In this document: positions 448 to 63,831 of the stretch, piece by piece
Position numbering within the stretch: the first letter of the stretch is position 1
How the letters are laid out: the number at the start of each line of letters is the position of its first letter
Assembly (NCBI GenBank): GCA_965644265.1
Contig: OZ286471.1
Span: forward strand, 46,872,001-46,936,000
Reading direction: 5' to 3'
From: Glycera tridactyla
Lineage: Eukaryota
Length of the DNA stretch: 64,000 nt
Translations under genes and position numbers: made by a program
Notes under the pieces: model-generated
The model's input: the letters and a program-made list of their open reading frames with translations, nothing else
What the model was told of the DNA's origin: nothing
Database searches by the model: none

Positions 448-636
448 ATCCTATATGTGAAGATGGTGCCATATGCCATACACCGACGGTTGCGGGTACA
501 GGTCTCGGGCTGAACTGTTCATTCCCCTTCTCATATGATGGGGCAAACTACACTGGGTGCATCACCACTGATCATGATCGACTATGGTGCTCTGTGGTCT
601 CCACTGAAGACGTCCAACTGTGGGGTCACTGCCTAG
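448..636 (+). CDS. Exon: short Cys-linker fused to FN2 #1
   Basis: ccag|ATCCT...CCTAG|gtagg, 189 nt; DPICEDGAICHTPTVAGTGLGLNCSFPFSYDGANYTGCITTDHDRLWCSVVSTEDVQLWGHCL; mostly missed by ORF track. Confidence 0.85.
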
Positions 637-3600
637 GTAGGAATTATGAGTTTTCACCTTACATCCACACCGAGTGCCAATGTGGAAAGAGAGAATATGA
701 GGCATGTTGTATTTATTCTTGTGAAAATGTAGCGAGAATTCATTCATATATCAAGTTTGCTTGTGTGTGCCTACTCGCCACATTCCCCTGCCTCTTGGTT
801 TCATCTACTCCCTTATCTTGAAGGAACATGAACTCTATGGGCCGTCCAGTACCTATTCCAGAACTGTTTACTGGGTGTCGTCCCTAATTTTATATGAAGA
901 ATCTGTGAGGACAAGCTTCTTAGTTAGTATGTCCTCAAAGTTTGTTAATCTTCAAATTGATAACAGGGCAATAACGAGGAATGACATAAAAATGCCCTAA
1001 TGAGGATATACCCGATAATGTTATCGCAAAATCACCTAGGACACAATCGTTTTCTGGCAACATCTGTGATGCTATCCTTATTGTTCACTCAACATTGATG
1101 AAAATGGTATTGCATTGTTTAAGGTGAATGATATTGACCATTTTCCTAGTGTCCCAATACAGAACAGTGGTCTCTTATTATGCACGTAGATCCCGTCTGT
1201 GAGGTTCCTGCATCTGAAGAGGCAGTCGGCAATAATGTAACAGTCTCTCATGTTCCGGATGGCTGCATCGTCCCCACCACTGGAGGAAGTGGTACTGAAC
1301 GGAAGTGTCTTTTTCCGTTTGTTTATGATGGTATAAAATATACGGGCTGCACTGACATGGATCATGACCAGATCTGGTGTGCAGTATCTGAAGGCGGCGA
1401 AGAGTTCCTATGGGGAAACTGTCTAGGTATGTGCGAATTGCTCTTTTTCGCATGCTGCATGTAGGCTCAATCGAGTCACATTGGGTAAAATGCGTGATTT
1501 GTTAGAAAAAAATAATTAGTGAAGAATAAATGATAAAATAAGAATTAGTAAATAAATGATAATTAGTTTGAATAAGCTAGGAATAATAACGAAGTAATGT
1601 CTTGTATTGTATCCGATGAAGCATGTGCATATCGTCTTATACAAAGCAAGTGGAAGGTGTGATTTGTTTCCGATAGTGGTGTTGCAAGACCACATAATAG
1701 TTTGAGGAGTGCCGGAAACAATTGCATCCCATTTTGTATACCTGATAGTAAATGATGTCTGCAGCTGAGATGACCTACTAAAGATTAATCAATGTGAAGG
1801 TTCGCAATAATTGACAATTGAGGATTAATCATCTTTTCTAGTAATGCCACAGGTATCGTCTGGGGAGCAGACAACTGCCACTGGGGATTCAGGTGAAATG
1901 TCGTCCAGTCAGTGAGATAGGTTCAAGGAAATAGGAGCCTTGGTATGGTAGAGCCTACCTTCTTTGTTTATATGTCAACTATTCATTCTGCCGTAGTCGC
2001 AAATTTAAGTGAATAATATATTCATTGCGCTACCTCCAGATTATGTGTGCGGATCGAACAAGATGATGGCAGCCAATTTGATCGATAATCGTACCGTCAC
2101 TCCACCAAACATAGAGGTAGAATTAATGGTCGAACCACAAGCCCGCGAATCCGAAGGTAGTCATCCTTACTCACAATCTTTATTTTCTGTATCACATATT
2201 CAAGACACGTTTTCACTCCTTTATCATAAAGTATCAGGAATTCTACGGTACATCCAAAATCATATTCCTTGTCTGCATTATTCACATATTCTGTGTTTGC
2301 AGCGGGAATTCCAATAGCTGATCTGCCTCCTTTCGTCCGATACCATCTCACAAATCAAATACAGTTGAACCTGCCCTGACTATGCCCGGTACTAAGCAAA
2401 ATCTCAGGGTTGCATTCAGGATTTCCTGAATTGGAGGCATTGGCCCCAATAATATGAGAAGAGGGCACATTTCTCCAAGAAATATCTCAACATGGGTGCA
2501 TTCAACATTGGATAGGTGCAGTCCTCTTGCAGATTTAGGGGGCATTGTGGCCCTGATTCCCCCAAAAAGGAACCCACACTCAACAAAGTGTGTGAAATTC
2601 CCGAATACCCCCTCTGGACGCAACCCTGAAAACTTTCCTAAGCAACCCTGCTGTATTCATCCCGCTTGAGTATTCCCATTATGATTCCCTCTACTGAGCA
2701 TGCATCTGTTCTAAGCATGCACTTTTCTGTCTTCCGTTGATCGCAATCCTCAGATTAGGTTTTACTGCATGCCAATTCCAGAAGTGAAGTCAGTTTCTAT
2801 GATATAATCTACATGTTCTTCACACATCTGTGGGTTGATCAATCTTTGCCGAGTTGACATCTCATTGACTTAATTTGAAGTGTGCTTACATTAGCCAGTC
2901 GACTGAATACTGCATGAGCTGGATTACCTCTTAAATTGTCACCAGAGAATGTTAACGTATTCTAGTGACATGTGAACATACTTATAGACCTGGTATGTGT
3001 TTTATTCCACTACTCAGGATGTTTCACACCAACGTCTGGTGGCACTGGAAACGGCGAGAACTGTCGTTTCCCCTTCTGGTATTCGGCTGGAATCTACTAC
3101 AGCTGCATCACTACAGCCGATCGAGATGGGCGGTGGTGTTCCTTAACCACATTCTATGACAGCAGTCAAGAATGGGGCTATTGTCAAGGTGAATATCAGA
3201 ACTACCTCATGATGTGACAGGTGGAACTTGGCACAGATAGTACGTTCCATATGGATTTGAGATATGGGAAATTATCCACTTATTTGGATTAGATCATCAG
3301 CAGCGTCCGGCATCGCCTCTTTAATGTTTACAATCTGTCTTTCTATCGAGTTATCTGTCTGCCCTCTTACAGTCCATCCATCCGTCTATCCATCTGCCTG
3401 TCTGTGTACCTGTTTTCCTTTCCTCTATGTCCTTGCCTTGCTCTCTATTCCTGTCCCTCTTTCTCTCATGGTACCTTCTCTCTGTCTCTGTCTCTGTTTG
3501 TTTGTCACTGCCTGTCTATCATTCTGTTCATCTATTTATCGGCCAGCTCATCCGGTCATCTATTTGCCTGTCTCTGCCCATTCCCCCGTCCTCCTGCTAA

Positions 3601-3775
3601 TATGTCTATCCACCCATCTCTTCACTCCTCTTCTCTGTCTCCCTTCTCTGTCTTTGTCTCTCTCTGACTGCCTGACTGCCTGCTTACATGTATGTCTGTC
3701 TGTCTGTGTCTGTCTGTCTATCATGATGTCAGTCCGTCTGTCTGTCTGACTGTCACTGACGTGATGTCAGTAGCA

Positions 3776-3860
<85 letters not shown>

Positions 3861-4656
3861 CTCTCCCTCTCTCTGTATTCATCTGTCACTCGCATACATA
3901 TAATATATACCTTGTTCTGTCTTCCAATCCTTCCCTATTCTATTTATGCTGCGATATTACTATTTACCAGAGGAGCAATGTGGCGATGCAGTGGATATTG
4001 CTGCAAACGTTCAAGACACAAAAGCTCCATCTACTTCCTCTACAACCACGAAGCAGCTGGTGGTGCCTGTGAATGATCCTAGAGATAATGAAGAGATACC
4101 CGATCCACTTAACATTGATGGGGTAGGAAGAGGTAGGATGTTGTTGATACGCACCTAAGATAGTAGCGATGCACAGGGCCTGATCAAATGTAGTTGTGCC
4201 AGTTCTAGCGAATATGACGTCAACTTTTAACCATCGCTTCTTACCTTGAAGACTGCACTCTAGAAAAACAAGTTTCATTCTTCGGTGCTATATGTAATCT
4301 TCATTCCAAGGCCCCTTCCTGTTCTATCCGATCCTCCAGTTTTCCAGAAATGCATTCACATGAACTCAGGAATCACGTCATGCCTGTTTCCCCCTCACTA
4401 TCGAAGTCTCTCCCCTTAGACATTAAACATAAACCCATCCTCAGGACTTTCAAAGCAATTCTTAAAGGCTTACTTCTGCATGTCTTGATTTTTCTAAGAG
4501 ATACATAAACAATGTAAATCGCCCTGGAGCTCTTCAAGAAAACGCCCATGATAGTCATTTGTGGTAGATTTGTGACTATATGTGTATATGTCTTCGATAT
4601 CGAAAAGTACAAGCAATTACTCAGCAATCATCTGCATGAATACGTGACCAATTCTT

Positions 4657-4742
<86 letters not shown>

Positions 4743-7700
4743 TGCCTATCCATAGTTACCGTAAGAGATATTGTTCCTATGCACTATATAGTATGTTTCA
4801 CGCCAACCTATGATGGGAATGCCGGAGGTAGTCCTTGTGAATTCCCCTTCTGGTACGCTGGATCACTGCACACTGACTGCATCAACATCGATAGACCAGC
4901 GCCGTGGTGTTCCATCACCACCTTCTTTGAACAGGAACAGTTATGGGGATATTGCTTAGGTAAATATATATATAACCTGACATTCTAGTGTTTTCAGGGA
5001 AGAATCACATTCTTCGATGAAGCAGCCTGTCACATATCATTTTCCCTCATTTTCTGAAAACATTAATGAAATAAGGGACAGGTCAACGGGTCCTTTCCAC
5101 AAATGTTGCCATGTATTTCGGATTATCCATGATAGTATTCACAACATTCCATTCATATATCTCTTATTGGTTGGATCCAGTAGCTCAGGTTATCTTCCCT
5201 ACTAGGTCAGATATATACTCAGCACATTTAATGTACAGTTTCTGTAAAATCCTAGGGTCAGCGTCCCATATCCTGGAGTATGCAACGCACTTGAGAATGG
5301 AATATAGTCTATATTTGATAGTTCGTCAAGTTGTAGTTTCAGCTTCCACGATTGCTTGCTGTTTTTATATACAGAGTGACTTGTCTTTCATTGATGCAGA
5401 TGAATTTTGTGCTGGCGTTACAACCACTACATCTACCTCCACCTCAACCACTTCATCCCCGACGGGAATTCCAGGTAGATGAAGGAATTGGTGATCAACC
5501 ACTTCTGAGTATCATATATTTGAATTTATGAGATGGAGATCGATTTTTCTGGTACGACACGTTAGATAATGATACGCATCAAGACTTGTGCCTCAGCTCC
5601 GACATCTGGAGTTCCAGTCCATGTACCGAATACATTCGTTTTCTAGCCTTAGTTCCATCACTTCCTGTCCAATTATATGAAGGCAGTATCGAAAAAAGGC
5701 ATTCTATGTCCATAAGTTTCATGATGCACGCTATTTTAGCATGACTATTCGGTGTTCAGTGTAGAGAATGTCTCCAGGAAAATACATCAGATTAGGAGTT
5801 AGTTTGAACTCCGACCTTGAACTTGAAACGTACGCACTAAATGTTCACGTACAGGGTGCATCTCAACTGATTGATGCGTCAATTTTCTCATTCAGAAGTT
5901 TCAGAGCTCCCAGGATCAAGTGACGCTCAAAATCTATTTCCAGGACCTGTAGTATCTAATTGTTCCATGTACTTTTTTAGTTCAAATGCCTCAAAATCTG
6001 GTTTGAAATTTAGCTTCCAACCAGTTCGGTATGCCCTTGAAATGTTTAAAGTGTATCTCCTATTTGAAGGCAAATATATTAAAATATTCGACTTATTCAC
6101 GTGGCCACAAGAAGGATGAAAACGGTGCACTTAGATCTCAGTCTTTCTCAGTGTAGGTGCTTAGAGCAAGATTGTCTGTAACTCACATATTTCAAACGTG
6201 CCATTTCAGTTGGATGCTACATCCCAACTAGCGGCGGCTCGGCTGGAGGGGCACGCTGCATATTCCCTTTTCAGTACAAGGGGAACTCTTATCGAAGTTG
6301 TACCGCATTAAAAAACGATGGCGTCGAGTGGTGTGCCACAACATCCAACTATGACGAGGATAAACTCTGGGGCAACTGCTTAGGTACTCTACCGAAAATA
6401 ATCCGGTCTAAACCATTCTATAACTAATTCTACGGTGAGAGTTTGGTGGGGATTCCGAGTTGAATGCTCCAGTTCAAATCAAATCAGGTTGAATCCAAAT
6501 TCTGGACGCTATCGTAACCATTATTCCATGTCCCTATCATCCTTTGGTATACTGTTGCCAAGTGCATGCTAGTCATTTTGATTCAATTTCCTGCATCAGT
6601 GTTTGTGCCCGACCTTCTCAATAGTGACTCAGGTGAGTTCTGCTCATAGGCTTGGGCTTCGTCAACTTGGGAGGGTAGCGCAAACCATGGGCCAGTGCCC
6701 GTTGTTACAGCATCCAAGACATGCAAAATTGGGTTGAAGGTCTCTCTCCGGTAATCTCAAGTCACCAATGCAAACTGACCTTGCTTACAATGAAACTGAG
6801 TCTGAGGCTCTGGGGTGTAATTTGTGGGAAATATTCTATCATAATCTTCTGATGGGTGGATCGTAACATTGATTTGACAGTATCCCGTCATCTTTACATG
6901 TACTATACTTTCACTACATAAGTAAAGTAAGGTGACGTTGAAATGCATTCCATCCAGATTGTTCACTACATTGGAAGTCATATTCGCGTCAATACCGGTC
7001 AGCCAACCATTCAAATTCCTGAGCTGAAGGACTAATGTTGGCGATGAGTTGTGAGTGCATGCCCTATATCTGACAATGAGATATTCTATGAATAACATTC
7101 TGATTAGTATCTTGCATTCTCATGGTCTGTAGAACCGGTGTGCGATGGTGTAACGGAGTCCGCGCTTCCTTTACCTGTTACGAGATCACCCGAAACACCA
7201 GTTCGAAGGACAGATCTACCGGTCACCCTCCCAGGTAGACATCTATCACTATTTGCATGCTAATGGACACTACCCTTCCATGAGAATAGGCCAGGCGATG
7301 CAACACATCGCTATGAGCTCCGAAGAATAACTTGCTTGATGATAGCATGGGAATTTTTCGAAACTAGATCACAGTGGAACACATCTTGTGTTCAAGATTT
7401 GTGTGAATGACTTGGACCTTCATGGAAGACTGTGTCTACCCCCATGCCTGAAGCATGTCATCTTCAATGAGAAATACCAGGCAATAGTCTCCTATCAAAT
7501 TCACTTCGACAAAACATCACTTTTTGATGGAAACAAACGGGTTATCAGAAAAATGTGTTGATCACATTGAATCATGTACCAATCACTGACATTTATATGT
7601 TTGTACAAATGTGCATATTCTGCTGACCTGTGTCATAAATACTCATTCAATTATTGTACCAGTAATCCATCAAATGCAGAAGTATCATTCCCGTCAGTTG

Positions 7701-18326: not shown

Positions 18327-18357
<31 letters not shown>

Positions 18358-57300: not shown

Positions 57301-60300
57301 TGAAGAACAACAACCGGGCATGGTGTTCTACAACTACCTTCTATGATGTTGACAAAAAATGGGGCAATTGTTTAGGTAGGCAAGTTGGTAATAGACTGCT
57401 AGGTTCGTCGTGAACTCAACTTGTTACTGTGGATTCTAATTTCATGCTGAGTGTGCCATGAATATATTGAATTTGTGATGCACATATATCTGGACCTGAA
57501 GTTTGTGAGTTGATTCCGAAAGTTCAGAGAGTATCTTTGGAGCAGTCCTGCATGGCACTGATGATTAACTGAGATAATGGTGACCGAAACATTCTCACAT
57601 CCGATCGTTGATTGTTACTCGATTCAACAGTGTGTTATTATTTATATGTAGAATCTCATTGAAGCAATTTGCAACTGTAAAATTGGATCGCACATTCACC
57701 AATTGACCATTTTCTGCATACTGCCTGCTCTACATTTTCCTAGATCTCAAATGCAGCGAATCCACCCTTGTTGCATCAACATTAGTAACAGAGGCATCCT
57801 CATCGGCATCACCCAGGCCAACCATACTTCCAACACAGCAAGTCACTCTACCAGGTAATATACCTCTGGCAGCTATATCATGAAGTTTCTGGCCATTCTC
57901 TAACGGCATTAGGTGATTTTATACGAATGCAAACCCATACTACATCTGTCACAAAAAAGATTGTTTGTCGCTTCTGTGACTGCATGATCGGGAATTGCCA
58001 TTTGGAGCCTGTAATCCAAAAATGCACTAGTTCATAAGTGATAGTCAATGTCTCTGGAATGTCACTGAGGCAAATAGGTCACCAATAATGACCAATGTCT
58101 ATCTCTAATTGGTCGCAGATTCTTCCCTCCTCTTCCAAACAGTATTCACTCGGCACTCCCTTTGATCTACAATATTGTGGAATTGGATACACTGTATCAT
58201 CCAACATTATGTACTTCAATCTTGAAAAGCCATTTTGTATCTCTGCAATACTTCATGCTTCAAACAGACCGCTTTTTTGGATTGGTTATGGAATATTGTC
58301 CAAAACATGTGTAGTTCTCCCTTCTCGGAATTTCAGGCAATCAATAGCTCCTAACTCGCTCGATTTATCGGTTTCACTTTCTACAGAAAATACAACTCGC
58401 TCGATTTATCAGTTTCACTTTCTACAGAAAATACAACCATCACAGATTGCATGGACTCCATTGCCATCTCCATGATATATTTCATGGGTTAAATCACTGC
58501 ATTTTTCAGATGCTTGCTATATACCTACAGTTGGTGGAACTGCCAATGGTGCTAGCTGTGTCTTTCCATTTTTCTACGGAGGTGACAAATACTGGCAATG
58601 TACTGTCGTGAAGAACAACAACCGGGCATGGTGTTCTACGACTACCTTCTATGATGTTGACAAAAAATGGGGCAATTGTTTAGGTAGGCAAGTTGGTAAT
58701 AGACTGCTAGGTTCGTCGTGAACTCAACTTGTTACTGTGGATTCTAATTTCATGCTGAGTGTTCCATGAATATATTGAATTTGTGATGCACATATATCTG
58801 GACCTGAAGTTTGTGAGTTGATTCCGGAAGTTCAGAGAGTATCTTTGAAGCAGTCCTGCATGGCACTGATGATTAACTGAGATTATGGTAATCGAAACAT
58901 TCTCACATCCGATCGTTGATTGTTACTCGATTCAACAGTGTGTGATTATGATATGTAGAATCTCATTGAAGCAATTTGCAACTGTAAAATCGAATCGCAC
59001 ATTCACGAGTTGACCATTTCCTGCATACTGCCTGCTCTACATTTTCCTAGATCTCAAATGCAGCGAATCCACCCTTGTTGCATCAACATTAGTAACAGAG
59101 GCATCCTCATCGGCATCACCCAGGCCAACCATACTTCCAACACAGCAAGTCACTCTACCAGGTAATATACCTCTGGCAGCTATATCATGAAGTTTCTGGC
59201 CATTCTCTAAAGGCATTAGGTGATTTTATACGAATGCAAACCCATACTACATCTCTCACAAAAAAGATTGCTTGTCGCTTCTGTGACTGCATGATCTGGA
59301 ATTGCCATTTGGAGCCTGTTATCCAAAAATGCACTAGTTCATAAGTGATTGTTAATATCTCTGGAATGTCACTGAGGTGAATTGGTCACCAATAATGACC
59401 AATGTCTGTCTGTAATTGGTCACATATTCTTCCCTCCTCTTCCAAACAGTATTCACTCAGCACTCCCTTTGATCTACAATATTTTGGAATTGGATACACT
59501 GTATCATCCAACAATATGTACTTCAATCTTGAGAAGCCATTTAGTATCTCCGCAATACTTCATGCTTCAAACAGACCGCTTTTTTGGATTAGTTAAAGAA
59601 TATTGTCCGAAACATGTGTAGTTCTCCATTCTCGGAATTTCAGGCAATCAATAGCTCCTAACTCGCTCGATTTATCAGTTTCACTTTCTACAGAAAATAC
59701 AACCATCACAGATTGCATGGACTCCATTGCCATCTCCATGATATATTTCATGGGTTCATTCACTACATTTTCCAGATGCTTGCTATATACCTACAGTGGG
59801 TGGAACTGCCAATGGTGCTAGCTGTGTCTTTCCATTTTTCTACGGAGGTGACAAATACTGGCAATGTACTGTCGTGAAGAACAACAACCGGGCATGGTGT
59901 TCTACAACTACCTTCTATGATGTTGACAAAAAATGGGGCAATTGTTTAGGTAGGCAAGTTGGTAAAAGACTGCTAGGCTCGTTGTGAACTCAACTTGTTA
60001 CTGTGAATTTTAATTTCATGCTGAGTGTTCCATGAATATATTGAGTTTGTGATGCACATATATCTGGACCTGAAGTTTGTGAGTTGATTCCGAAAGTTCA
60101 GAGAGTATCTTTGAAGCAGTCCTGCATGGCACTGATAAGTAACTGAGATAATGGTAACCGAAACATTCTTACATCCGATCATTGATTGTTACTCAATTCA
60201 ACAGTGTGTGGTTATGATATGTAGAATCTCATTGAAGCAATTTGCAACTGTAAAATTGAATCGCACATTCACCAATTGACCATTTTCTGCATACTGCCTG

Positions 60301-63300
60301 CTCAACATTTTCCTAGATCTCGAATGCAGCGAATCCACCCTTGTTGCATCAACATTAGTAACAGAGGCATCCTCATCGGCATCACCCAGGCCAACTATAC
60401 TTCCAACACAGCAAGTCACTCTACCAGGTAATATACCTCTGGCACCTATATCATGAAGTTTCTGGCCATTCTCACAAATGCATCAGGTGATAATATACGA
60501 ACGCAAACCCATATTACATCAGTCAAAAAACAGATTGTTTGCCCCTCCTGTGACTGCATGATCTGGAATTGCCATGTTGAGCCTGTTATCCAAAAATGCA
60601 CTAGTTCATAAGTGATAGTCAATGTCTCTGGAATGTCACTGAGGTGAATTGGTCACCAATGATGACCAATGTCTATGTGTAATTGGTCGCAGATTCTTCC
60701 CTCCTCTTCCAAACAGTATTCACTCGGCACTCCCTTTGATCTACAACATTGTGGAATTGGATAAACTGTATCATCCAACATTATGCACTTCTATCTTGAA
60801 AAGCCATTTTGTATCTCTGCAATACTTCATGCTTCAAACAGACCGCTTTTTTGGATTGGTTAAAGAATATTGTCCAAAACATGTGTAGTTCTCCCTTCTC
60901 GGAATTTCAGGCAATCAATAGCTCCTAACTCGCTCGATTTATCAGTTTCACTTTCTACAGAAAATACAACTCGCTCGATTTATCAGTTTCACTTTCTACA
61001 GAAAATACAACCATCACAGATTGCATGGACTCCATTGCCATCTCCATGATATATTTCATGGGTTAAATCACTGCATTTTTCAGATGGTTGCTATATACCT
61101 ACAGTGGGTGGAACTGCCAATGGTGCCAGCTGTGTCTTTCCATTTTTCTACGGAGGTGACAAATACTGGCAATGTACTGTCGTGAAGAACAACAACCGGG
61201 CATGGTGTTCTACAACTACCTTCTATGATGTTGACAAAAAGTGGGGCAATTGTTTAGGTAGGCAAGTTGGTAATAGACTGCTAGGTTCGTCGTGAACTCA
61301 ACTTGTTACTGTGGATTCTGATTTCATGCTGAGTGTGCCATGAATATATTGAATTTGTGATGCACATATATCTGGACCTGAAGTTTGTGAGTTGATTCCG
61401 AAAGTTCAGAGAGTATCTTTGAAGCAGTCCTGCATGGCACTGATGATTAACTGAGATAATGGTAACCGAAACATTCTCACATCCGATCGTTGATTGTTAC
61501 TCGATTCAACAGTGTGTGATTATGATATGTAGAATCTCATTGAAGCAATTTGCAACTGTAAAATTGAATTGCACATTCACCAGTTGACCATTTCCTGCAT
61601 ACTGCATGCTCTACATTTTCCTAGATCTCAAATGCAGCGAATCCACCCTTGTTGCATCAACATTAGTAACAGAGGCATCCTCATCGGCATCACTCAGGCC
61701 AACCATACTTCCAACACAGCAAGTCACTCTACCAGGTAATATACCTCTGGCAGCTATATCATGAAGTTTCTGGCCATTCTCTAAAGGCATTAGGTGATTT
61801 TATACAAATGCAAACCCATACTACATCTGTCACAAAAAAGATTGCTTGTCGCTTCTGTAACTGCATGATCTGGAATTGCCATTTGGAGCCTGTTATCCAA
61901 AAATGCACTAGTTCATAAGTGATGGTTAATATCTCTGGAATGTCACTGAGGTGAATTGGTCACCAATAATGACCAATGTCTGTCTGTAATTGGTCGCATA
62001 TTCTTCCCTCCTCTTCTAAACAGTATTTACTCACCCCTTCCTATTGATCTACAATATTTTGGAATTGGATACACTGTATCATCCAACAATATGTACTTCA
62101 ATCTTGAGAAGCCATCTCGTATCTCCGCAATACTTCATGCTTCAAACAGACCGATTTTTTGGATTAGTTAAAGAATATTGTCCAAAACATATGTAGTTCT
62201 GCCTTCTCGGAATTTCAGGCCATCAATAGCTCCTAACTCGCTCGATTATTCAGTTTCACTTTATACAGAAAATACTACTATCACAGATTGCATGGACTCT
62301 ATTGCCATCGCCATGATATATTTCATGATTCCATTCACTGCATTTTCCAGATGGTTGCTATATACCTACAGTGGGTGGAACTGCCAATGGTGCTAGCTGT
62401 GTCTTTCCATTTTTCTACGGAGGTGACAAATACTGGCAATGTACTGTCGTGAAGAACAACAATCAGGCATGGTGTTCTACAACTACCTTCTATGATGTTG
62501 ACAAAAAATGGGGCAATTGTTTAGGTAGGCAAGTTGGTAATAGACTGCTTGTTTTGTTGTGAACTCAACTTGTTTTCATGGATTTTCATTTCATACTGAT
62601 TGTGCCATGAATATATTGAATTTGTGATGCACGTCAATCTTGACCTGAAGTTTGTGAGTTGATTCCGAAGATTCAGAGAGTATCTTCGAAGCAGTCCTGC
62701 ATGGCACTGATAAGTAACTGAGATATCTGTAACCGGAACATTCTTACATCCGATTGTTGATTGTTACTCAATTCAACAGTGTGTGATTATGATATGTAGA
62801 ATTTCGTTAAAGCAATTTACAACTGTCAAATTGAATTGCACATTCACCAATTGACTATTTCCTGCATACTGCCTGCTCTACATTTTCCTAGATCTCAAAT
62901 GTGGCGAATCCACCCTTGTTGCATCAACATTAGTAACAGAGGCATCCTCATCGGCATCACCCAGGCCATCCATACTTCCCACACAGCAAGTCACTCTACC
63001 AGGTAATATACCTCTGGCAGCTATATCATGAAGTTTCTGGCCATTCTCTAAAGGCATTAGGTGATTTTATACGAATGCAAACCCATACTACATCTCTCAC
63101 AAAAAAGATTGCTTGTCGCTTCTGTAACTGCATGATCTGGAATTGCCATTTGGAGCCTGTTATCCAAAAATGCACTAGTTCATAAGTGATGGTTAATATC
63201 TCTGGAATGTCACTGAGGTGAATTGGTCACCAATAATGACCAATGTCTGTCTGTAATTGGTCGCATATTCTTCCCTCCTCTTCTAAACAGTATTTACTCA

Positions 63301-63831
63301 GCACTCCCTTTGATCTACAATATTTTGGAATTGGATACACTGTATCATCCAACATTATGTACTTCAATCTTGAGAAGCCATTTAGTATCTCCGCAATACT
63401 TCATGCTTCAAACAGACCGCTTTTTTGGATTAGTTGAAGAATATTGTCCAAAACATATGTAGTTCTCCCCTTTAGGAATTTCAGGCAATCAATTGCTCCT
63501 AACTCGCTCGATTTATCAGTTTCACTTTCTACAGAAAATACAACTCGCTCGATTTATCGGTTTCACTTTCTACAGAAAATACAACCATCACAGATTGCAT
63601 GGACTCCATTGCCATCTCCATGATATATTTCATGGGTTAAATCACTGCATTTTTCAGATGGTTGCTATATACCTACAGTGGGTGGAACTGCCAATGGTGC
63701 TAGCTGTGTCTTTCCATTTTTCTACGGAGGTGACAAATACTGGCAATGTACTGTCGTGAAGAACAACAACCGGGCATGGTGTTCTACAACTACCTTCTAT
63801 GATGTTGACAAAAGATGGGGCAATTGTTTAG
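448..63831 (+). CDS. Partial spliced gene (5' and 3' ends outside window): giant extracellular-type protein of >=46 tandem FN2 domains separated by S/T/P-rich linkers
   Basis: About 90 exons with AG/GT boundaries, all phase 1-1 and length divisible by 3, no stops seen; FN2 signature C-x-FPF-x-Y-x5-C...WC...WG-x-C in every domain exon. Confidence 0.9.
1190..1426 (+). CDS. Exon: linker fused to FN2 #2
   Basis: gtag|ATCCC...TCTAG|gtatg, 237 nt; DPVCEVPASEE...DGCIVPTTGGSGTERKCLFPFVYDG...WCAVSEGGEEFLWGNCL. Confidence 0.85.
2040..2156 (+). CDS. Linker exon
   Basis: ccag|ATTAT...CGAAG|gtagt, 117 nt; DYVCGSNKMM...QARESE with Cys at position 4. Confidence 0.75.
2405..2628. mobile_element. ~225-bp MITE-like element (possibly hAT-related termini), copy 1
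   Basis: TIRs CAGGGTTGCATTCAG / CTGGACGCAACCCTG (13/15 match); internally homologous to reverse complement of 18396-18621; no clear TSD. Confidence 0.6.
3018..3188 (+). CDS. FN2 exon #3
   Basis: tcag|GATGT...TCAAG|gtgaa, 171 nt; GCFTPTSGGTGNGENCRFPFWYSAG...WCSLTTFYDSSQEWGYCQ. Confidence 0.9.
3400..3875. repeat. Pyrimidine-rich degenerate (TCTG)n tract ending in pure (TC)n at 3779-3856
   Basis: Direct reading. Confidence 0.9.
3971..4132 (+). CDS. Linker exon (3' boundary less certain)
   Basis: ccag|AGGAG...AAGAG|gtagg, 162 nt; EEQCGDAV...STSSTTTK...; 4132 is the first phase-1 GT I found. Confidence 0.7.
4659..4742. repeat. (TA)n microsatellite
   Basis: Direct reading, two interruptions. 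Confidence 0.95.
4792..4959 (+). CDS. FN2 exon #4
   Basis: atag|TATGT...CTTAG|gtaaa, 168 nt; VCFTPTYDGNAGGSPCEFPFWYAG...WGYCL. Confidence 0.9.
   Translation, partial: YVSRQPMMGMPEVVLVNSPSGTLDHCTLTASTSIDQRRGVPSPPSLNRNSYGDIA
5400..5474 (+). CDS. Thr/Ser-rich linker exon
   Basis: gcag|ATGAA...TCCAG|gtaga, 75 nt; DEFCAGVTTTTSTSTSTTSSPTGIP. Confidence 0.85.
6210..6383 (+). CDS. FN2 exon #5 (absent from ORF track)
   Basis: tcag|TTGGA...CTTAG|gtact, 174 nt; VGCYIPTSGGSAGGARCIFPFQYKG...WCATTSNYDEDKLWGNCL. Confidence 0.9.
7133..7234 (+). CDS. Linker exon
   Basis: gtag|AACCG...CCCAG|gtaga, 102 nt; EPVCDGVTESALPLPVTRSPETP...VTLP. Confidence 0.85.
7763..7936 (+). CDS. FN2 exon #6
   Basis: tcag|CGGGT...CCGAG|gtaga, 174 nt; AGCFIPTIGGNANGARCVFPFFYDG...WCATTSDYDADKRWGNCR. 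Confidence 0.9.
8494..8600. repeat. Compound (GT)n/G-run/(GA)n microsatellite
   Basis: Direct reading. Confidence 0.85.
8740..8844 (+). CDS. Thr/Ser-rich linker exon
   Basis: acag|ACCTC...TGAAG|gtaca, 105 nt; DLTCVTSTSPATSTLKTTTSTSTSSPATTTTTTPE. Confidence 0.85.
9936..10109 (+). CDS. FN2 exon #7 (absent from ORF track)
   Basis: tcag|GTGAT...CTTAG|gtaaa, 174 nt; GDCYTPTSGGTAGGARCSFPFLYNG...WCATTLLYNVDRLWGNCL. Confidence 0.9.
10642..10791 (+). CDS. Thr/Ser-rich linker exon
   Basis: gcag|ATCGA...ACCAG|gtacc, 150 nt; DRVCGIASPSTMSSMTSRTTT...TLIP. Confidence 0.85.
11561..11728 (+). CDS. FN2 exon #8
   Basis: ttag|TTGGT...CTTAG|gtgaa, 168 nt; VGCYTPTEGGTADGAPCVFPFVYRG...WGNCL. Confidence 0.9.
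   Translation: MVAIHRRKEGRQMEHHVYSPSSTEVKPICNVPTSEMITSSGVPPRPSTTTSGGIA
11925..11963. mobile_element. Terminal fragment of the TA-flanked MITE family seen at 16011-16376
   Basis: TACAGTGCCTGCTCTAAAGACCACCTCTGTAAAGACCAC matches the GAACCTGCTCTAAAGACCACCTCT end of that family. Confidence 0.55.
12436..12648 (+). CDS. Exon: linker fused to FN2 #9 (ORF track shows the wrong frame)
   Basis: gcag|ATGTC...TCTCG|gtacg, 213 nt; DVFCPPETTTGAPTFLPLGCYIPTRNARGICVFPFIYRG...WCSLTSNYDVDKRWGECL. Confidence 0.9.
12885..12930. repeat. 9-bp tandem repeat (GATATATGT/C) x~5
   Basis: Direct reading. Confidence 0.75.
12958..13050 (+). CDS. Thr/Ser-rich linker exon
   Basis: tcag|AGGAG...GCCAG|gtaca, 93 nt; EEQCESSSTTTVLPVKPSTTAAVSATSTSLP. 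Confidence 0.85.
13159..13887. mobile_element. Fold-back / long inverted-repeat element in intron
   Basis: Arms ~13195-13393 and ~13414-13632 are reverse complements; outer arms 13159-13192 and 13849-13887 also pair; element class is inferred. Confidence 0.7.
15239..15412 (+). CDS. FN2 exon #10
   Basis: atag|GTGGA...TGAAG|gtgag, 174 nt; GGCFTPTTGGNARGDPCVFPFYYLG...WCATTTLYDIDKRWGNCE. Confidence 0.9.
16011..16185. mobile_element. ~170-bp MITE copy A (pogo/Tc1-mariner-like CAGT...ACTG termini, left end eroded)
   Basis: GAACCTGCTCTAAAGACC...GGTCTTTATAGACAGGTTCTACTG-TA; internal TAAAGACCAC subrepeats. Confidence 0.7.
16217..16376. mobile_element. ~160-bp MITE copy B, inverted relative to copy A, TA-flanked
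   Basis: TA-CAGTCGAACCTG...CAGGTTCGGCTG-TA; reverse complement aligns along copy A. Confidence 0.75.
16524..16628 (+). CDS. Thr-rich linker exon (absent from ORF track)
   Basis: gcag|ATGAA...ACTTG|gtatg, 105 nt; DEVCFSTARFTATAVPLQTTVTTQHTSTRQTLVPL. Confidence 0.85.
17498..17668 (+). CDS. FN2 exon #11
   Basis: acag|ATTGC...TCTAG|gtata, 171 nt; DCYIPTTGGNSNGDPCAFPFFYRG...WGDCL. Confidence 0.9.
   Translation: MATSPLLGGIPMAILAPSLSSIGVCAILSVSPSTTTIVCGVRQQYFMTWISDGETV
17740..17960. repeat. Degenerate (GAT/AAT)n trinucleotide tract
   Basis: Direct reading. Confidence 0.65.
18128..18259 (+). CDS. Thr/Ser/Pro-rich linker exon
   Basis: tcag|ATGCG...GGCAG|gtgat, 132 nt; DARCQESSTAGSPTTPAPSST...ASTLA. 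Confidence 0.85.
18262..18395. repeat. (CGT/CAT)n trinucleotide tract
   Basis: Pure (CGT)n near 18326-18356 in degenerate flanks. Confidence 0.85.
18396..18621. mobile_element. MITE-like element copy 2, opposite orientation to 2405-2628
   Basis: Ends CGGGGTTGCATCGG / CTGGATGCAAGCCTG; reverse complement aligns by eye with 2405-2628. Confidence 0.6.
19013..19186 (+). CDS. FN2 exon #12
   Basis: gcag|CCGGC...CTTGG|gtatt, 174 nt; AGCYIPTTGGTAAGARCVFPFFYQS...WCSTTVYYSVDKQWGNCL. Confidence 0.9.
19730..19864 (+). CDS. Linker exon with internal 21-nt repeat x3
   Basis: acag|AGGTC...TCCAG|gtact, 135 nt; EVVCEETT...TTEVTSPTTEVTSPTMGVTSP...TLP. Confidence 0.85.
20454..20627 (+). CDS. FN2 exon #13 (first array-type)
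   Basis: AG|ATGGC...TTTAG|GT, 174 nt. Confidence 0.9.
20728..20830 (+). pseudogene. Degenerate 3'-half FN2 exon fragment
   Basis: AAGAAATGACAACACAGCATGGTGTTCC...TGGGGCAATTGTTTAACTAGGC; no acceptor, donor GGTAG changed to ACTAG. Confidence 0.75.
21408..21518 (+). CDS. Linker exon (array type)
   Basis: AG|ATCTC...ACCAG|GT, 111 nt; DLKCEQSTT...QVTLP. Confidence 0.9.
22185..22358 (+). CDS. FN2 exon #14
   Basis: 174 nt, AG/GT, phase 1-1. Confidence 0.9.
22699..22809 (+). CDS. Linker exon
   Basis: 111 nt, AG/GT. Confidence 0.9.
23478..23651 (+). CDS. FN2 exon #15
   Basis: 174 nt, AG/GT; PTEGG variant. Confidence 0.9.
24004..24114 (+). CDS. Linker exon
   Basis: 111 nt, AG/GT. Confidence 0.9.
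24781..24954 (+). CDS. FN2 exon #16
   Basis: 174 nt, AG/GT. Confidence 0.9.
25307..25417 (+). CDS. Linker exon
   Basis: 111 nt, AG/GT. Confidence 0.9.
26088..26261 (+). CDS. FN2 exon #17
   Basis: 174 nt, AG/GT. Confidence 0.9.
   Translation: MVVIYLPWVELPMVIAVSFHFSTEVIHTGNVLSLRTTTGHGVQQLPSMMLTNNGAIV
26614..26724 (+). CDS. Linker exon
   Basis: 111 nt, AG/GT. Confidence 0.9.
27393..27566 (+). CDS. FN2 exon #18
   Basis: 174 nt, AG/GT; TVSG variant. Confidence 0.9.
27919..28065 (+). CDS. Chimeric exon: 5' half of linker fused in frame to 3' half of FN2
   Basis: ctag|ATCTC...GAAACAGACAAATACTGG...TTTAG|gtagg, 147 nt; DLKCSESTLVVSTLET-DKYWQCAVVKNNNRAWCSTTTFYDVDKKWGNCL; inclusion in mRNA not shown. 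Confidence 0.7.
28433..28543 (+). CDS. Linker exon
   Basis: 111 nt, AG/GT. Confidence 0.9.
29198..29371 (+). CDS. FN2 exon #19
   Basis: 174 nt, AG/GT. Confidence 0.9.
29582..29620 (+). pseudogene. Orphan 3' FN2 exon fragment followed by a second copy of the downstream intron
   Basis: CCTTCTATGATGTTGACAAAAAATGGGGTAATTGTTCAG|gtgggc with no upstream acceptor. Confidence 0.75.
29978..30088 (+). CDS. Linker exon
   Basis: 111 nt, AG/GT. Confidence 0.9.
30685..30858 (+). CDS. FN2 exon #20
   Basis: 174 nt, AG/GT. Confidence 0.9.
31226..31336 (+). CDS. Linker exon
   Basis: 111 nt; DLKCGESTLVASTLVTEASSSASPRPTILPTQQVTLP. Confidence 0.9.
31933..32106 (+). CDS. FN2 exon #21
   Basis: 174 nt; DGCYIPTVGGTANGASCVFPFFYGGDKYWQCTVVKNNNRAWCSTTTFYDVDKQWGNCL. 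Confidence 0.9.
32455..32565 (+). CDS. Linker exon
   Basis: 111 nt, AG/GT. Confidence 0.9.
33181..33354 (+). CDS. FN2 exon #22
   Basis: 174 nt, AG/GT. Confidence 0.9.
33703..33813 (+). CDS. Linker exon
   Basis: 111 nt, AG/GT. Confidence 0.9.
34430..34603 (+). CDS. FN2 exon #23
   Basis: 174 nt, AG/GT. Confidence 0.9.
34971..35081 (+). CDS. Linker exon (RPSILP variant)
   Basis: 111 nt, AG/GT. Confidence 0.9.
35676..35849 (+). CDS. FN2 exon #24
   Basis: 174 nt, AG/GT. Confidence 0.9.
36198..36308 (+). CDS. Linker exon
   Basis: 111 nt, AG/GT. Confidence 0.9.
36924..37097 (+). CDS. FN2 exon #25
   Basis: 174 nt, AG/GT. Confidence 0.9.
37446..37556 (+). CDS. Linker exon
   Basis: 111 nt, AG/GT. 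Confidence 0.9.
38173..38346 (+). CDS. FN2 exon #26
   Basis: 174 nt, AG/GT. Confidence 0.9.
38714..38824 (+). CDS. Linker exon (RPSILP variant)
   Basis: 111 nt, AG/GT. Confidence 0.9.
39440..39613 (+). CDS. FN2 exon #27
   Basis: 174 nt, AG/GT. Confidence 0.9.
39962..40072 (+). CDS. Linker exon
   Basis: 111 nt, AG/GT. Confidence 0.9.
40689..40862 (+). CDS. FN2 exon #28
   Basis: 174 nt, AG/GT; NQAW variant. Confidence 0.9.
41230..41340 (+). CDS. Linker exon (RPSILP variant)
   Basis: 111 nt, AG/GT. Confidence 0.9.
41957..42130 (+). CDS. FN2 exon #29
   Basis: 174 nt, AG/GT. Confidence 0.9.
42498..42608 (+). CDS. Linker exon
   Basis: 111 nt, AG/GT. Confidence 0.9.
43225..43398 (+). CDS. FN2 exon #30
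   Basis: 174 nt, AG/GT. Confidence 0.9.
43766..43876 (+). CDS. Linker exon
   Basis: 111 nt, AG/GT. Confidence 0.9.
44493..44666 (+). CDS. FN2 exon #31
   Basis: 174 nt, AG/GT. Confidence 0.9.
45034..45144 (+). CDS. Linker exon (RPSILP variant)
   Basis: 111 nt, AG/GT. Confidence 0.9.
45760..45933 (+). CDS. FN2 exon #32
   Basis: 174 nt, AG/GT. Confidence 0.9.
46301..46411 (+). CDS. Linker exon
   Basis: 111 nt, AG/GT. Confidence 0.9.
47028..47201 (+). CDS. FN2 exon #33
   Basis: 174 nt, AG/GT. Confidence 0.9.
47550..47660 (+). CDS. Linker exon
   Basis: 111 nt, AG/GT. Confidence 0.9.
48273..48446 (+). CDS. FN2 exon #34
   Basis: 174 nt, AG/GT; start of the continuous DKKW block. Confidence 0.9.
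48795..48905 (+). CDS. Linker exon
   Basis: 111 nt, AG/GT. Confidence 0.9.
49521..49694 (+). CDS. FN2 exon #35
   Basis: 174 nt, AG/GT. Confidence 0.9.
50061..50171 (+). CDS. Linker exon
   Basis: 111 nt, AG/GT. Confidence 0.9.
50828..51001 (+). CDS. FN2 exon #36
   Basis: 174 nt, AG/GT. Confidence 0.9.
51370..51480 (+). CDS. Linker exon
   Basis: 111 nt, AG/GT. Confidence 0.9.
52096..52269 (+). CDS. FN2 exon #37
   Basis: 174 nt, AG/GT. Confidence 0.9.
52637..52747 (+). CDS. Linker exon
   Basis: 111 nt, AG/GT. Confidence 0.9.
53362..53535 (+). CDS. FN2 exon #38
   Basis: 174 nt, AG/GT. Confidence 0.9.
53903..54013 (+). CDS. Linker exon
   Basis: 111 nt, AG/GT. Confidence 0.9.
54629..54802 (+). 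CDS. FN2 exon #39
   Basis: 174 nt, AG/GT. Confidence 0.9.
55170..55280 (+). CDS. Linker exon
   Basis: 111 nt, AG/GT. Confidence 0.9.
55895..56068 (+). CDS. FN2 exon #40
   Basis: 174 nt, AG/GT. Confidence 0.9.
56435..56545 (+). CDS. Linker exon
   Basis: 111 nt, AG/GT. Confidence 0.9.
57202..57375 (+). CDS. FN2 exon #41
   Basis: 174 nt, AG/GT. Confidence 0.9.
57744..57854 (+). CDS. Linker exon
   Basis: 111 nt, AG/GT. Confidence 0.9.
58510..58683 (+). CDS. FN2 exon #42
   Basis: 174 nt, AG/GT; DACY variant. Confidence 0.9.
59051..59161 (+). CDS. Linker exon
   Basis: 111 nt, AG/GT. Confidence 0.9.
59776..59949 (+). CDS. FN2 exon #43
   Basis: 174 nt, AG/GT; DACY variant. Confidence 0.9.
60317..60427 (+). 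CDS. Linker exon
   Basis: 111 nt, AG/GT. Confidence 0.9.
61084..61257 (+). CDS. FN2 exon #44
   Basis: 174 nt, AG/GT. Confidence 0.9.
61625..61735 (+). CDS. Linker exon
   Basis: 111 nt, AG/GT. Confidence 0.9.
62351..62524 (+). CDS. FN2 exon #45
   Basis: 174 nt, AG/GT. Confidence 0.9.
62892..63002 (+). CDS. Linker exon
   Basis: 111 nt, AG/GT. Confidence 0.9.
63658..63831 (+). CDS. FN2 exon #46
   Basis: 174 nt, AG/GT; DKRW variant. Confidence 0.9.

What the first reader, a model, noticed from the sequence alone, without database searches (positions are those of the whole stretch)
448..63831. Giant 'beads-on-a-mucin-string' protein with at least 46 fibronectin type II domains
Seen: 46 intact FN2 exons alternate with S/T/P-rich linkers (array linker 12 S/T + 4 P in 37 aa) in one reading frame of about 4,360 codons, with both ends outside the window. 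Established: the characterised FN2 proteins I know carry only 1-4 FN2 modules (fibronectin 2, MMP-2/MMP-9 3, BSP seminal proteins 2, ELSPBP1 4, mannose-receptor family 1), and FN2 binds gelatin/collagen or choline phospholipids through an aromatic pocket whose F/Y/W residues are retained here. The T-V-G-G-x-A-N-G-x-x-C lead-in resembles the MMP-2/9 modules. Inference: a very high-avidity secreted or surface collagen- or lipid-binding glycoprotein (mucus, adhesive, matrix or gamete coat) of a type I cannot match to a described family.
Basis: partly seen in the sequence, partly recalled or inferred. Interest (0 to 1): 0.88.

Follow-up and report, generated by a model that had tools for sequence, protein, structure and literature searches.

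The report
Giant FN2-and-mucin-linker repeat gene
This 64-kb stretch is an inner part of one very large animal gene in which 46 collagen-binding-type (fibronectin type II) domains alternate with mucin-like spacers; it holds more such domains than any protein in a library of 1.84 billion, but its ligand, tissue and full length are still unknown.

Summary
The + strand carries 46 intact FN2 modules (Pfam PF00040), one per exon. They alternate with 43 linker exons rich in Ser, Thr and Pro; three FN2 exons carry their linker fused in.

All 90 exons of my model have AG/GT borders and are phase 1-1. Together they read 4,341 codons without a stop, and the gene is open at both window ends.

From about 20.4 kb on, a two-exon cassette of 1.25-1.31 kb is tandemly repeated at 90-100% identity. 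Exons are about three times better conserved than introns, and dN/dS is about 0.3, so these are selected coding exons.

Every module has two extra cysteines: one 14 residues before the core, and one in a C-x4-C motif formed across the splice junction.

An extracellular, multivalent, probably O-glycosylated binder is the best reading. However, predicted proteins with 10-29 FN2 domains already exist, some with the same bead-and-linker plan or with a SEA domain and membrane anchor. One wall of the gelatin pocket is Asn instead of Phe in 41 of 46 modules.

Earlier notes of this scan report the same array in neighbouring windows, roughly 280 modules in all; I did not check this. Single-gene status, expression and ligand remain untested.

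The parts
448..63831 (+). Inner segment of one transcription unit: 90 phase 1-1 exons, 4,341 codons, no stop, open at both ends
448..636 (+). First exon in the window. It holds the C-x4-C second Cys, a very short linker, the outer Cys and FN2 module 1, all fused in one exon.
   Evidence: Pfam fn2 E 5e-11
1190..1426 (+). Fused linker + FN2 exon (module 2), 237 nt, phase 1-1
12436..12648 (+). Fused linker + FN2 exon (module 9), 213 nt. It is the only module whose outer Cys lies at -11 rather than -14.
3018..20453 (+). Old, diverged part of the gene: modules 3-12, 42-72% identical to the array module. Their linker exons are individual, 17-54 codons long. Introns reach 2.2 kb.
20454..63831 (+). 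Tandem array of 34 two-exon cassettes with a period of 1,245-1,308 bp (a few older units are longer). Units 20-45 are 90-100% identical, introns included. A three-unit higher-order repeat is present.
33181..33354 (+). Typical FN2 exon: 174 nt, 58 codons, containing the outer Cys and the four-Cys FN2 core
33703..33813 (+). Typical linker exon: 111 nt, 37 codons. It starts D-L-K-C, which completes C-x4-C, and is followed by 12 Ser/Thr and 4 Pro.
27919..28065 (+). Chimeric exon: the first 16 codons of a linker exon joined in frame to the second half of an FN2 exon. It is 147 nt, open, with AG/GT intact. It lies between two copies of intron 1 and is the product of an unequal exchange.
20738..20815 (+). 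Dead relic of the second half of an FN2 exon. Its donor is destroyed and a stop lies upstream.
29575..29620 (+). Dead relic of the end of an FN2 exon, with no in-phase acceptor before a stop

Best explanation
**What it is.** The window is an internal part of one very large animal gene for an extracellular 'beads on a string' glycoprotein.

**The bead.** Each bead is a fibronectin type II domain of the gelatinase kind. It carries two extra, invariant cysteines, one 14 residues before the core and one five residues after it, on the next exon. They most likely pair with each other. That would close each bead into a loop and bring its two linker attachments side by side.

**The string.** The beads are joined by spacers of about 30 residues rich in Ser, Thr and Pro. 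These are most likely O-glycosylated and extended.

**How it grew.** The gene grew by repeated unequal crossing-over of a 1.27-kb cassette of two symmetric phase 1-1 exons. Any number of cassettes therefore keeps the reading frame. The copies are kept functional by purifying selection.

**Proposed function (inferred, not shown).** It acts as a high-avidity multivalent binder in mucus, matrix, an adhesive secretion or a surface coat. Many weak FN2 pockets on a stiff glycosylated stalk would grip a repetitive ligand. Candidate ligands are collagen-like or proline-rich chains, or choline-bearing surfaces. The plan resembles the way DMBT1/gp-340 uses SRCR domains on Ser/Thr/Pro spacers. Relatives suggest the unseen 3' end could carry a SEA domain and a membrane anchor.
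For: **Shown**
- There are 46 FN2 modules on one strand.
- All 90 exons have AG/GT borders and are phase 1-1. They give 4,341 codons with no stop.
- In array units 20-45, nucleotide diversity is 0.016 in FN2 exons and 0.023 in linker exons, against 0.057-0.060 in introns.
- dN/dS is 0.30 for FN2 exons and 0.39 for linker exons. Old modules are saturated at synonymous sites yet keep the fold residues.
- Units differ by 0-10%, fall into length classes and a three-unit higher-order repeat, and have left recombination relics.
- The outer Cys is present in all 46 modules (at -14 in 45 of them, at -11 in one), and C-x4-C in 46/46.
- A relative's six-Cys unit folds confidently as FN2 (pLDDT 87). Single-residue bridges appear near both extra Cys, at residues 8 and 65.
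- A second organism (L001) has the same module in phase 1-1 exons, with C-x4-C across the intron.
- P0003 repeats the same bead-and-linker plan 16 times. P0005 and P0045 join FN2 arrays to a mucin domain, SEA and a membrane anchor.
- There is no excess of signal-peptide-like first exons, and no AATAAA on the + strand across the last 43 kb.

**From established knowledge**
- FN2 pockets bind gelatin or collagen (PMC4635314).
- DMBT1's binding capacity scales with its SRCR copy number (PMC5435793).
Against: - There is no transcript evidence. The gene ends, signal peptide and any anchor lie outside the window.
- The pocket departs from proven gelatin binders. It has Asn for the Phe of G-F-C in 41/46 modules and Lys/Asn for the Arg/Asp pair, so the ligand may be something else.
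- O-glycosylation and the third disulfide are inferred only. The tool gives no coordinates, so the Cys-Cys distance was not measured.
- The exact copy number in a 95-100% identical array depends on the assembly.
- Because all exons are symmetric, the mature protein could contain far fewer modules than the gene.
Confidence: 0.6

Rival explanations
1. It is one gene, but the cassettes are a reservoir of skippable or alternative exons. Mature proteins would then carry only a variable subset of modules and would be much smaller than the genomic array suggests.
For: Every exon is phase 1-1, so any subset splices in frame. A chimeric half-module exon with intact splice sites exists and would be harmless if it were skipped.
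Against: Purifying selection acts on all copies, including old and diverged ones. All 90 splice-site pairs are intact. I looked for no selector or docking elements. Relatives encode 16-29 modules in continuous open frames.
Confidence: 0.15
2. The locus is a cluster of several smaller FN2 genes on one strand rather than one gene.
For: Introns of up to 2.2 kb in the first 20 kb could hide first or last exons. Nine AATAAA motifs lie on the + strand before 21.1 kb.
Against: No exon in the window starts or ends out of phase. Only one signal-peptide-like ATG exon candidate was found on the + strand, against four on the control strand. The array is free of AATAAA for 43 kb. Every module needs the next exon to complete C-x4-C.
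Confidence: 0.1
3. The array is a neutral or dying satellite derived from an FN2 gene, or its size is an assembly artefact.
For: Units of 1.25-1.3 kb at 95-100% identity are hard to assemble. Two dead relic exons exist.
Against: There is no stop in 4,341 codons. dN/dS is 0.3, and exons are about three times more conserved than introns. Copies differ in an ordered way, with length classes, block-wise R/Q and K/Q variants, and a higher-order repeat. A collapsed or inflated assembly would not produce this.
Confidence: 0.05

Closest known systems
FN2 modules of gelatinases MMP-2 and MMP-9 (PF00040)
   Same: These are the best solved relatives (E 1e-29 and 8e-29). About half the residues are identical to MMP-2 module 3. 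The four-Cys spacing is the same, as is the G-G-x-A-x-G lead-in. The Tyr/Trp/Tyr/Trp pocket residues are kept. A relative's unit matches only FN2 folds in the PDB.
   Different: The gelatinases have three modules inserted in a protease, whereas here there are 46 or more with no catalytic domain in view. This gene adds two extra cysteines per module. The loop between Cys2 and Cys3 is one residue shorter than in Endo180 and the gelatinases. Asn replaces the Phe of G-F-C in 41/46 modules, and Lys/Asn replaces the Arg/Asp pair.
DMBT1 / gp-340 / salivary agglutinin (SRCR domains separated by SID spacers)
   Same: Small disulfide-rich binding domains alternate with short Ser/Thr/Pro spacers in a tandem array. 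The arrays vary in copy number, and binding capacity scales with the number of domains. The protein is a secreted mucosal glycoprotein (PMC5435793).
   Different: The binding domain is SRCR, not FN2, so this is an analogue and not a relative. DMBT1 has 8-13 repeats, not 46 or more. It ends in CUB and ZP domains, whereas the ends of this gene are unknown.
Apolipoprotein(a), kringle IV type 2 array
   Same: A two-exon cassette coding one small disulfide-knotted domain of the kringle/FN2 kind is tandemly repeated at near identity inside one gene. This creates a size-variable protein (my own knowledge; title and abstract of PMC7613587, listed and not opened).
   Different: Apo(a) has true three-disulfide kringles of about 80 residues, short linkers, a 5.5-kb unit and a protease-like end. 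Here the domains are FN2 cores with an added outer Cys pair and mucin-like spacers.
Uncharacterised predicted multi-FN2 proteins (P0003 from a metagenome contig; P0005 Branchiostoma belcheri KAI8499649.1; P0045 Oculina patagonica KAL9950856.1; P0001 Sardina pilchardus XP_062381919.1)
   Same: P0003 has 16 six-Cys FN2 modules, each followed by a Pro/Ser/Thr linker, with a unit of 94-105 residues against 95 here. P0005 has 18 FN2 modules, a long mucin domain, SEA, EGF and a membrane anchor. P0045 has FN2, a mucin domain, SEA and an anchor.
   Different: The domains are at most about 55% identical. These proteins have 5-19 modules, not 46 or more. P0003 is intronless and spaces its last Cys by seven residues, not four. 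None has been studied.

Membership tests
Fibronectin type II domain (Pfam PF00040) | Profile match above the curated cut-off | tested here: met
   Four sampled exons score 43-65 bits against a cut-off of 22.2, E 5e-11 to 5e-18. All 46 match the core pattern.
Fibronectin type II domain (Pfam PF00040) | Four cysteines with the canonical spacing (Endo180: 187-213 and 201-228, i.e. 14, 12 and 15 residues) | tested here: met
   The Cys1-Cys2 spacing is 14 in 46/46 modules. Cys2-Cys3 is 11 in 42 and 10 in 4, one to two residues shorter than canonical. Cys3-Cys4 is 15 in 43 (PMC4635314).
Fibronectin type II domain (Pfam PF00040) | FN2 fold | tested here: inconclusive
   The fold was tested only on a relative's six-Cys unit (P0003:206-276), with window exons in the alignment. 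It gave pLDDT 87, and the top 50 PDB matches were all FN2. The window's own spliced unit could not be handed to the tool.
Gelatin/collagen-binding FN2 (MMP-2, fibronectin, Endo180, mannose receptor) | Pocket residues shown by mutation or comparison to matter in Endo180: Tyr193, Arg206/Asp208, Tyr219, Trp225, Phe227 | tested here: not met
   The Tyr193 equivalent is kept in 46/46 modules, Tyr219 in 43/46 and Trp225 in 46/46. The Phe227 equivalent is Asn in 41/46, and Arg206/Asp208 are Lys/Asn in the array (PMC4635314, PMC10914487). So the pocket is partly kept and partly changed.
Gelatin/collagen-binding FN2 (MMP-2, fibronectin, Endo180, mannose receptor) | Binding to gelatin or collagen | not testable with these tools
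   This needs a recombinant unit tested on gelatin-Sepharose or by SPR.
Mucin-like (PTS) glycoprotein | Tandem segments rich in Pro, Thr and Ser | tested here: met
   Linker exons overall are 16.8% Ser, 17.5% Thr and 10.6% Pro. The array linker has 16 of 37 residues as Ser, Thr or Pro. The segments are short (25-54 residues) and interrupted by folded domains, unlike classical mucin PTS blocks.
Mucin-like (PTS) glycoprotein | Dense O-glycosylation; for gel-forming mucins VWD/CK ends, for membrane mucins SEA plus an anchor | not testable with these tools
   The ends of the gene lie outside the window. The relatives P0005 and P0045 have SEA plus an anchor.
Kringle (PF00051) | About 80 residues with three disulfides and a Pfam kringle match | tested here: not met
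   Only fn2 was reported by Pfam. Kringle clusters rank far below FN2 in the Atlas search, 0.63 against 0.93. No kringle appears among the top 50 fold matches. The only shared feature is a possible outer disulfide, which is inferred.
DMBT1-type SRCR/SID agglutinin | SRCR domains | tested here: not met
   The domains are FN2. The resemblance is one of architecture only.

The most novel reading that the evidence does not exclude
The array seen here continues through the neighbouring windows as one gene. Earlier notes report at least 43, 66, 82 and 47 further modules, from 185 kb upstream to 62 kb or more downstream. That would give a secreted or surface protein with roughly 280 six-cysteine FN2 modules and 25,000 or more residues, among the largest proteins known. 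Its module, an FN2 core closed by a kringle-like outer disulfide formed across an exon junction, would be a living intermediate between kringles and FN2 domains.
Probability: 0.3. Interest if true: 0.85.

Novelty: new variant of a known kind. Interest (0 to 1): 0.62.

Why it matters
Characterised FN2 proteins use one to four modules. Here a single gene strings together at least 46, and possibly several hundred, on glycosylated spacers. No protein among 1.84 billion library representatives showed more than 29 FN2 stretches among the 150 best hits, and scores add up per domain, so a larger array should have ranked at the top.

If the gene is expressed as one chain, three things follow:
- It would be a new type of giant mucin-like binder. 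It would offer a natural test of how avidity scales with module number, as in DMBT1 and apo(a).
- It would be a good candidate component of mucus, adhesive or egg-coat material.
- The invariant extra cysteine pair, split between exons, bears on the old question of how FN2 domains relate to kringles.

The near-identical 1.27-kb cassettes also predict strong copy-number variation between individuals.

Tried and rejected
- **Species identification failed.** A word-index search with the unique 78-residue exon 1192-1425 found nothing. The run and assembly accessions of related contigs appear in no paper. The earlier notes name no taxon. The best domain-level relatives are only about 55% identical, so the organism's own proteins are not among the hits.
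- **Spliced products could not be submitted.** They cannot be given by reference, so I did not search or fold the window's own six-Cys unit. I used a relative's unit instead.
- **Described families.** I searched papers for a described multi-FN2, mucin-like or adhesive family. I found only the planarian nidovirus FN2 domains and the salmon-louse FN2 expansion: 192 domains in 74 genes, mostly occurring alone.
- **Ozhogina et al. 2001** on the origin of FN2 and kringles is not held in the library.
- **Kringle membership** was considered and rejected.
- **Internal gene starts.** I scanned for signal-peptide first exons and found no excess over the control strand.

Full report
**1. What is in the sequence**

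The window has about 40% G+C and shows eukaryotic gene structure. A six-frame pattern scan found 46 FN2 cores. All are on the + strand, from 516 to 63827. Four sampled exons match Pfam PF00040 at E 5e-11 to 5e-18, well above the curated cut-off.

Each core is followed by one codon, one base and then GT. Each is preceded by an in-phase AG with a pyrimidine tract. Each FN2 module is therefore one symmetric phase 1-1 exon, typically 174 nt.

In every interval between FN2 exons there is one further phase 1-1 exon. It begins [D/E]-x-x-C and continues rich in Ser, Thr and Pro. In three places (448-636, 1190-1426, 12436-12648) this linker is fused to the FN2 module in a single exon.

With a chimeric exon found later, the model has 90 exons, 13,023 exonic bases and 4,341 codons with no stop. 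Introns run from 309 to 2,188 bp, with a median of 612. The first exon begins and the last exon ends in phase 1, so the gene continues on both sides.

**2. The genomic array**

Modules 1-12, in the first 20 kb, are old. They are 42-72% identical to the array module and have individual linkers.

From 20,454 onwards a two-exon cassette repeats with a period of 1,245-1,308 bp. Units 20-45 are 90-100% identical, introns included. Units 21-23 recur as units 24-26 at 99.8-100% identity, which is a three-unit higher-order repeat. The length classes of 1,248, 1,267 and 1,307 bp partly reflect a 41-bp tandem duplication in the second intron.

Unequal exchange has left visible scars:
- Unit 18 contains two copies of intron 1 flanking a chimeric exon (27919-28065). 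This exon joins the start of a linker exon in frame to the second half of an FN2 exon, and it still has AG/GT borders.
- Two further FN2 fragments are dead. The one at 20738-20815 has lost its donor. The one at 29575-29620 has no acceptor.

This ordered variation argues for a real, evolving array and against an assembly artefact. The exact copy number still depends on the assembly.

**3. Are the exons functional?**

- In units 20-45, nucleotide diversity is 0.016 in FN2 exons and 0.023 in linker exons, against 0.057-0.060 in the two introns.
- Pairwise dN/dS is 0.30 for array FN2 exons and 0.39 for linker exons. Among the old modules synonymous sites are saturated (pS 0.85) while pN is 0.27.
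- There is no stop in 4,341 codons, and all 90 splice-site pairs are intact.

These are selected coding exons.

**4. One gene or several?**

Evidence inside the window favours one transcription unit:
- All exons share the same phase.
- Every module needs the next exon to complete its C-x4-C motif, in 46 of 46 junctions.
- Only one signal-peptide-like ATG exon candidate lies on the + strand, against four on the control strand.
- There is no AATAAA on the + strand from 21,042 to the end, while the opposite strand has 13 there. This count is not independent across near-identical repeats.

There is no transcript evidence. Because all exons are symmetric, exon skipping cannot be excluded.

**5. The module**

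The nearest solved relatives are the FN2 modules of MMP-9 and MMP-2 (E 1e-29 and 8e-29). Fibronectin, PDC-109, the mannose-receptor family, IGF2R, SEL1L and factor XII follow.

I mapped the module onto Endo180, whose disulfides are 187-213 and 201-228 and where Y193A, R206A/D208A and Y219A abolish gelatin binding (PMC4635314). The results are:

| Endo180 position | State in the 46 modules |
|---|---|
| Tyr193 equivalent | kept in 46/46 |
| Trp before Cys3 | kept in 46/46 |
| Tyr219 equivalent | kept in 43/46 |
| Trp225 equivalent | kept in 46/46 |
| Phe227 equivalent | Asn in 41/46 |
| Arg206/Asp208 pair | Lys/Asn in the array loop K-N-N-N-R/Q |

DEC-205 lacks the aromatic residues at the Tyr193 and Phe227 positions and does not bind collagen (PMC10914487). 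So the pocket is largely kept but not fully, and the ligand need not be gelatin.

From memory, the Tyr/Trp/Tyr triad that holds phosphorylcholine in PDC-109 corresponds to three of the conserved positions. Choline-type ligands therefore remain possible.

**6. Two extra cysteines**

Besides the four core cysteines, each unit has one Cys 14 residues before Cys1 (45 of 46 modules; 11 residues in the other one) and one Cys five residues after Cys4, on the next exon. Earlier notes of this scan made the same observation (s1-318271, s1-302870); I confirmed it here.

I could not fold the window's own spliced unit. A six-Cys unit of the relative P0003, aligned with window exons, folds with mean pLDDT 87. 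It shows isolated bridge residues at positions 8 and 65, next to the two extra cysteines. All 50 best PDB matches to it are FN2 domains and none is a kringle.

An intramodule third disulfide that ties the two ends of each bead together is the most economical reading, but it is inferred. If true, tension along the chain would pass through that disulfide and not through the fold.

**7. Relatives elsewhere**

A profile of 18 window exons was searched against 1.84 billion representatives. It found 6,169 proteins at E up to 0.001. Among the 150 best, the largest numbers of FN2 stretches are 29 (a dinoflagellate transcript), 27, 27, 22, 19 and 17. Scores add up per domain, so a 46-module protein should have ranked first. 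None is there.

The named hits are all 'uncharacterized' or 'hypothetical': Sardina pilchardus (17 modules with no linkers), a frog (10 modules, followed by a Cys-rich C-terminal region that I did not classify), Branchiostoma belcheri, two shrimps and the coral Oculina patagonica.

Three hits matter for interpretation:
- P0003 is an intronless 1,552-residue ORF on a 1.09-Mb metagenome contig. It has 16 six-Cys FN2 modules, each followed by a Pro/Ser/Thr/Lys linker, with a unit of 94-105 residues.
- P0005 from amphioxus has 18 FN2 modules, a long mucin domain, SEA, EGF, a membrane anchor and a tail.
- P0045 from coral has FN2, a mucin domain, SEA and an anchor.

A genomic contig of another organism (L001) shows two complete phase 1-1 exons of 234 and 246 nt, and the start of a third. 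Each holds a linker, the outer Cys and an FN2 core, with C-x4-C formed across the intron. The module and its exon logic are therefore conserved beyond this genome. The fused form seen in three window exons may be the older one.

**8. Literature**

I found no described family of multi-FN2 mucin-like or adhesive proteins. FN2 domains outside vertebrates are known. The salmon louse has 192 domains in 74 genes, mostly alone or with trypsin, and planarians and their nidovirus also have them.

The closest described architecture is DMBT1/gp-340. It has 8-13 SRCR domains separated by Ser/Thr/Pro-rich SIDs, it is copy-number polymorphic, and its bacterial binding falls as the domain number falls (PMC5435793).

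**9. Mechanism proposed**

Shown here: the exon structure, the selection, the FN2 identity, the cysteine pattern and the array dynamics.

Inferred: the product is an extracellular chain of disulfide-closed FN2 beads held apart by extended, O-glycosylated spacers. It would act as a high-avidity multivalent binder in mucus, matrix, an adhesive or a surface coat. It may be anchored through an unseen SEA domain and membrane end, as in P0005 and P0045.

The ligand is open. Collagen-like or proline-rich chains are the default for FN2, but the changed pocket lowers that claim.

**10. Extent**

Earlier notes of this scan describe the same kind of array in adjoining windows:
- at least 43 modules, 185 kb upstream
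- at least 66 modules, 122 kb upstream
- at least 48 to 82 modules, 61 kb upstream
- at least 47 modules, starting at 62,351 of this window

They also describe a second FN2 locus on another piece of the genome. I could not read those windows. If they are contiguous and form one gene, the total is about 280 modules.

**11. Verdict**

This is a new and extreme variant of an existing but unstudied kind, the multi-FN2 mucin-like proteins. The main gaps are transcript evidence, the gene ends and the ligand.

Noticed in passing
window 27919-28065: A chimeric 147-nt exon joins the start of a linker exon in frame to the second half of an FN2 exon. It has AG/GT borders and an open frame, and it sits between two copies of intron 1. 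If spliced in, it adds a half module that lacks Cys1 and the F-P-F strand.
   Followed up: yes
window 20738-20815 and 29575-29620: Two dead relics of FN2 exon ends lie inside introns of units 13 and 19. In the first the donor is mutated and a stop lies upstream. In the second there is no in-phase acceptor. They help explain why these units are longer.
   Followed up: yes
window 13209-13622: A nested inverted repeat lies in the longest intron. Its 89-nt arms are 94% complementary, and inner 61-nt arms are 95% complementary. It looks like a small foldback or MITE-type insertion.
   Followed up: partly
window 50671-50755, 57045-57129, 58353-58437, 60927-61011, 63501-63585: A 41-bp segment just upstream of the FN2 exon is tandemly duplicated in five units. 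The duplication marks the 1,307-1,308-bp subfamily of the cassette.
   Followed up: partly
window 19782-19844: A 21-bp unit is repeated three times inside linker exon 19730-19864 (T-T-E-V-T-S-P repeated). It is a small mucin-type repeat within one linker.
   Followed up: no
window 3779-3874 and 4659-4742: Long (TC)48 and (AT)42 microsatellites lie in introns of the old part of the gene.
   Followed up: no
window 21042-64000: There is no AATAAA on the + strand across 43 kb of the array, against 13 on the opposite strand. This fits a long transcription unit, but the counts are not independent because the units are near-identical.
   Followed up: partly
whole model, window 448-63831: The model has only 3 N-x-S/T sequons in 4,341 residues, although it is 5.3% Asn and 21.5% Ser+Thr. 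About 50 would be expected by composition. N-glycosylation sites are almost absent, although the repeats make this a non-independent count.
   Followed up: no
window 18260-18390: Directly after the donor chosen for linker exon 18128-18259, the frame stays open through a run of GTC/CGT triplets, which reads as poly-Arg. It offers many alternative in-phase donors. This is a triplet repeat at an exon-intron border.
   Followed up: no
L002 10001-14659 (ENA ERZ22147071, contig of 1.09 Mb): A relative with 16 six-Cys FN2 modules and Pro/Ser/Thr linkers is encoded as one uninterrupted 4,659-nt ORF. It is presumably from a eukaryote in a metagenome assembly. The same architecture therefore exists without introns.
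   Followed up: partly
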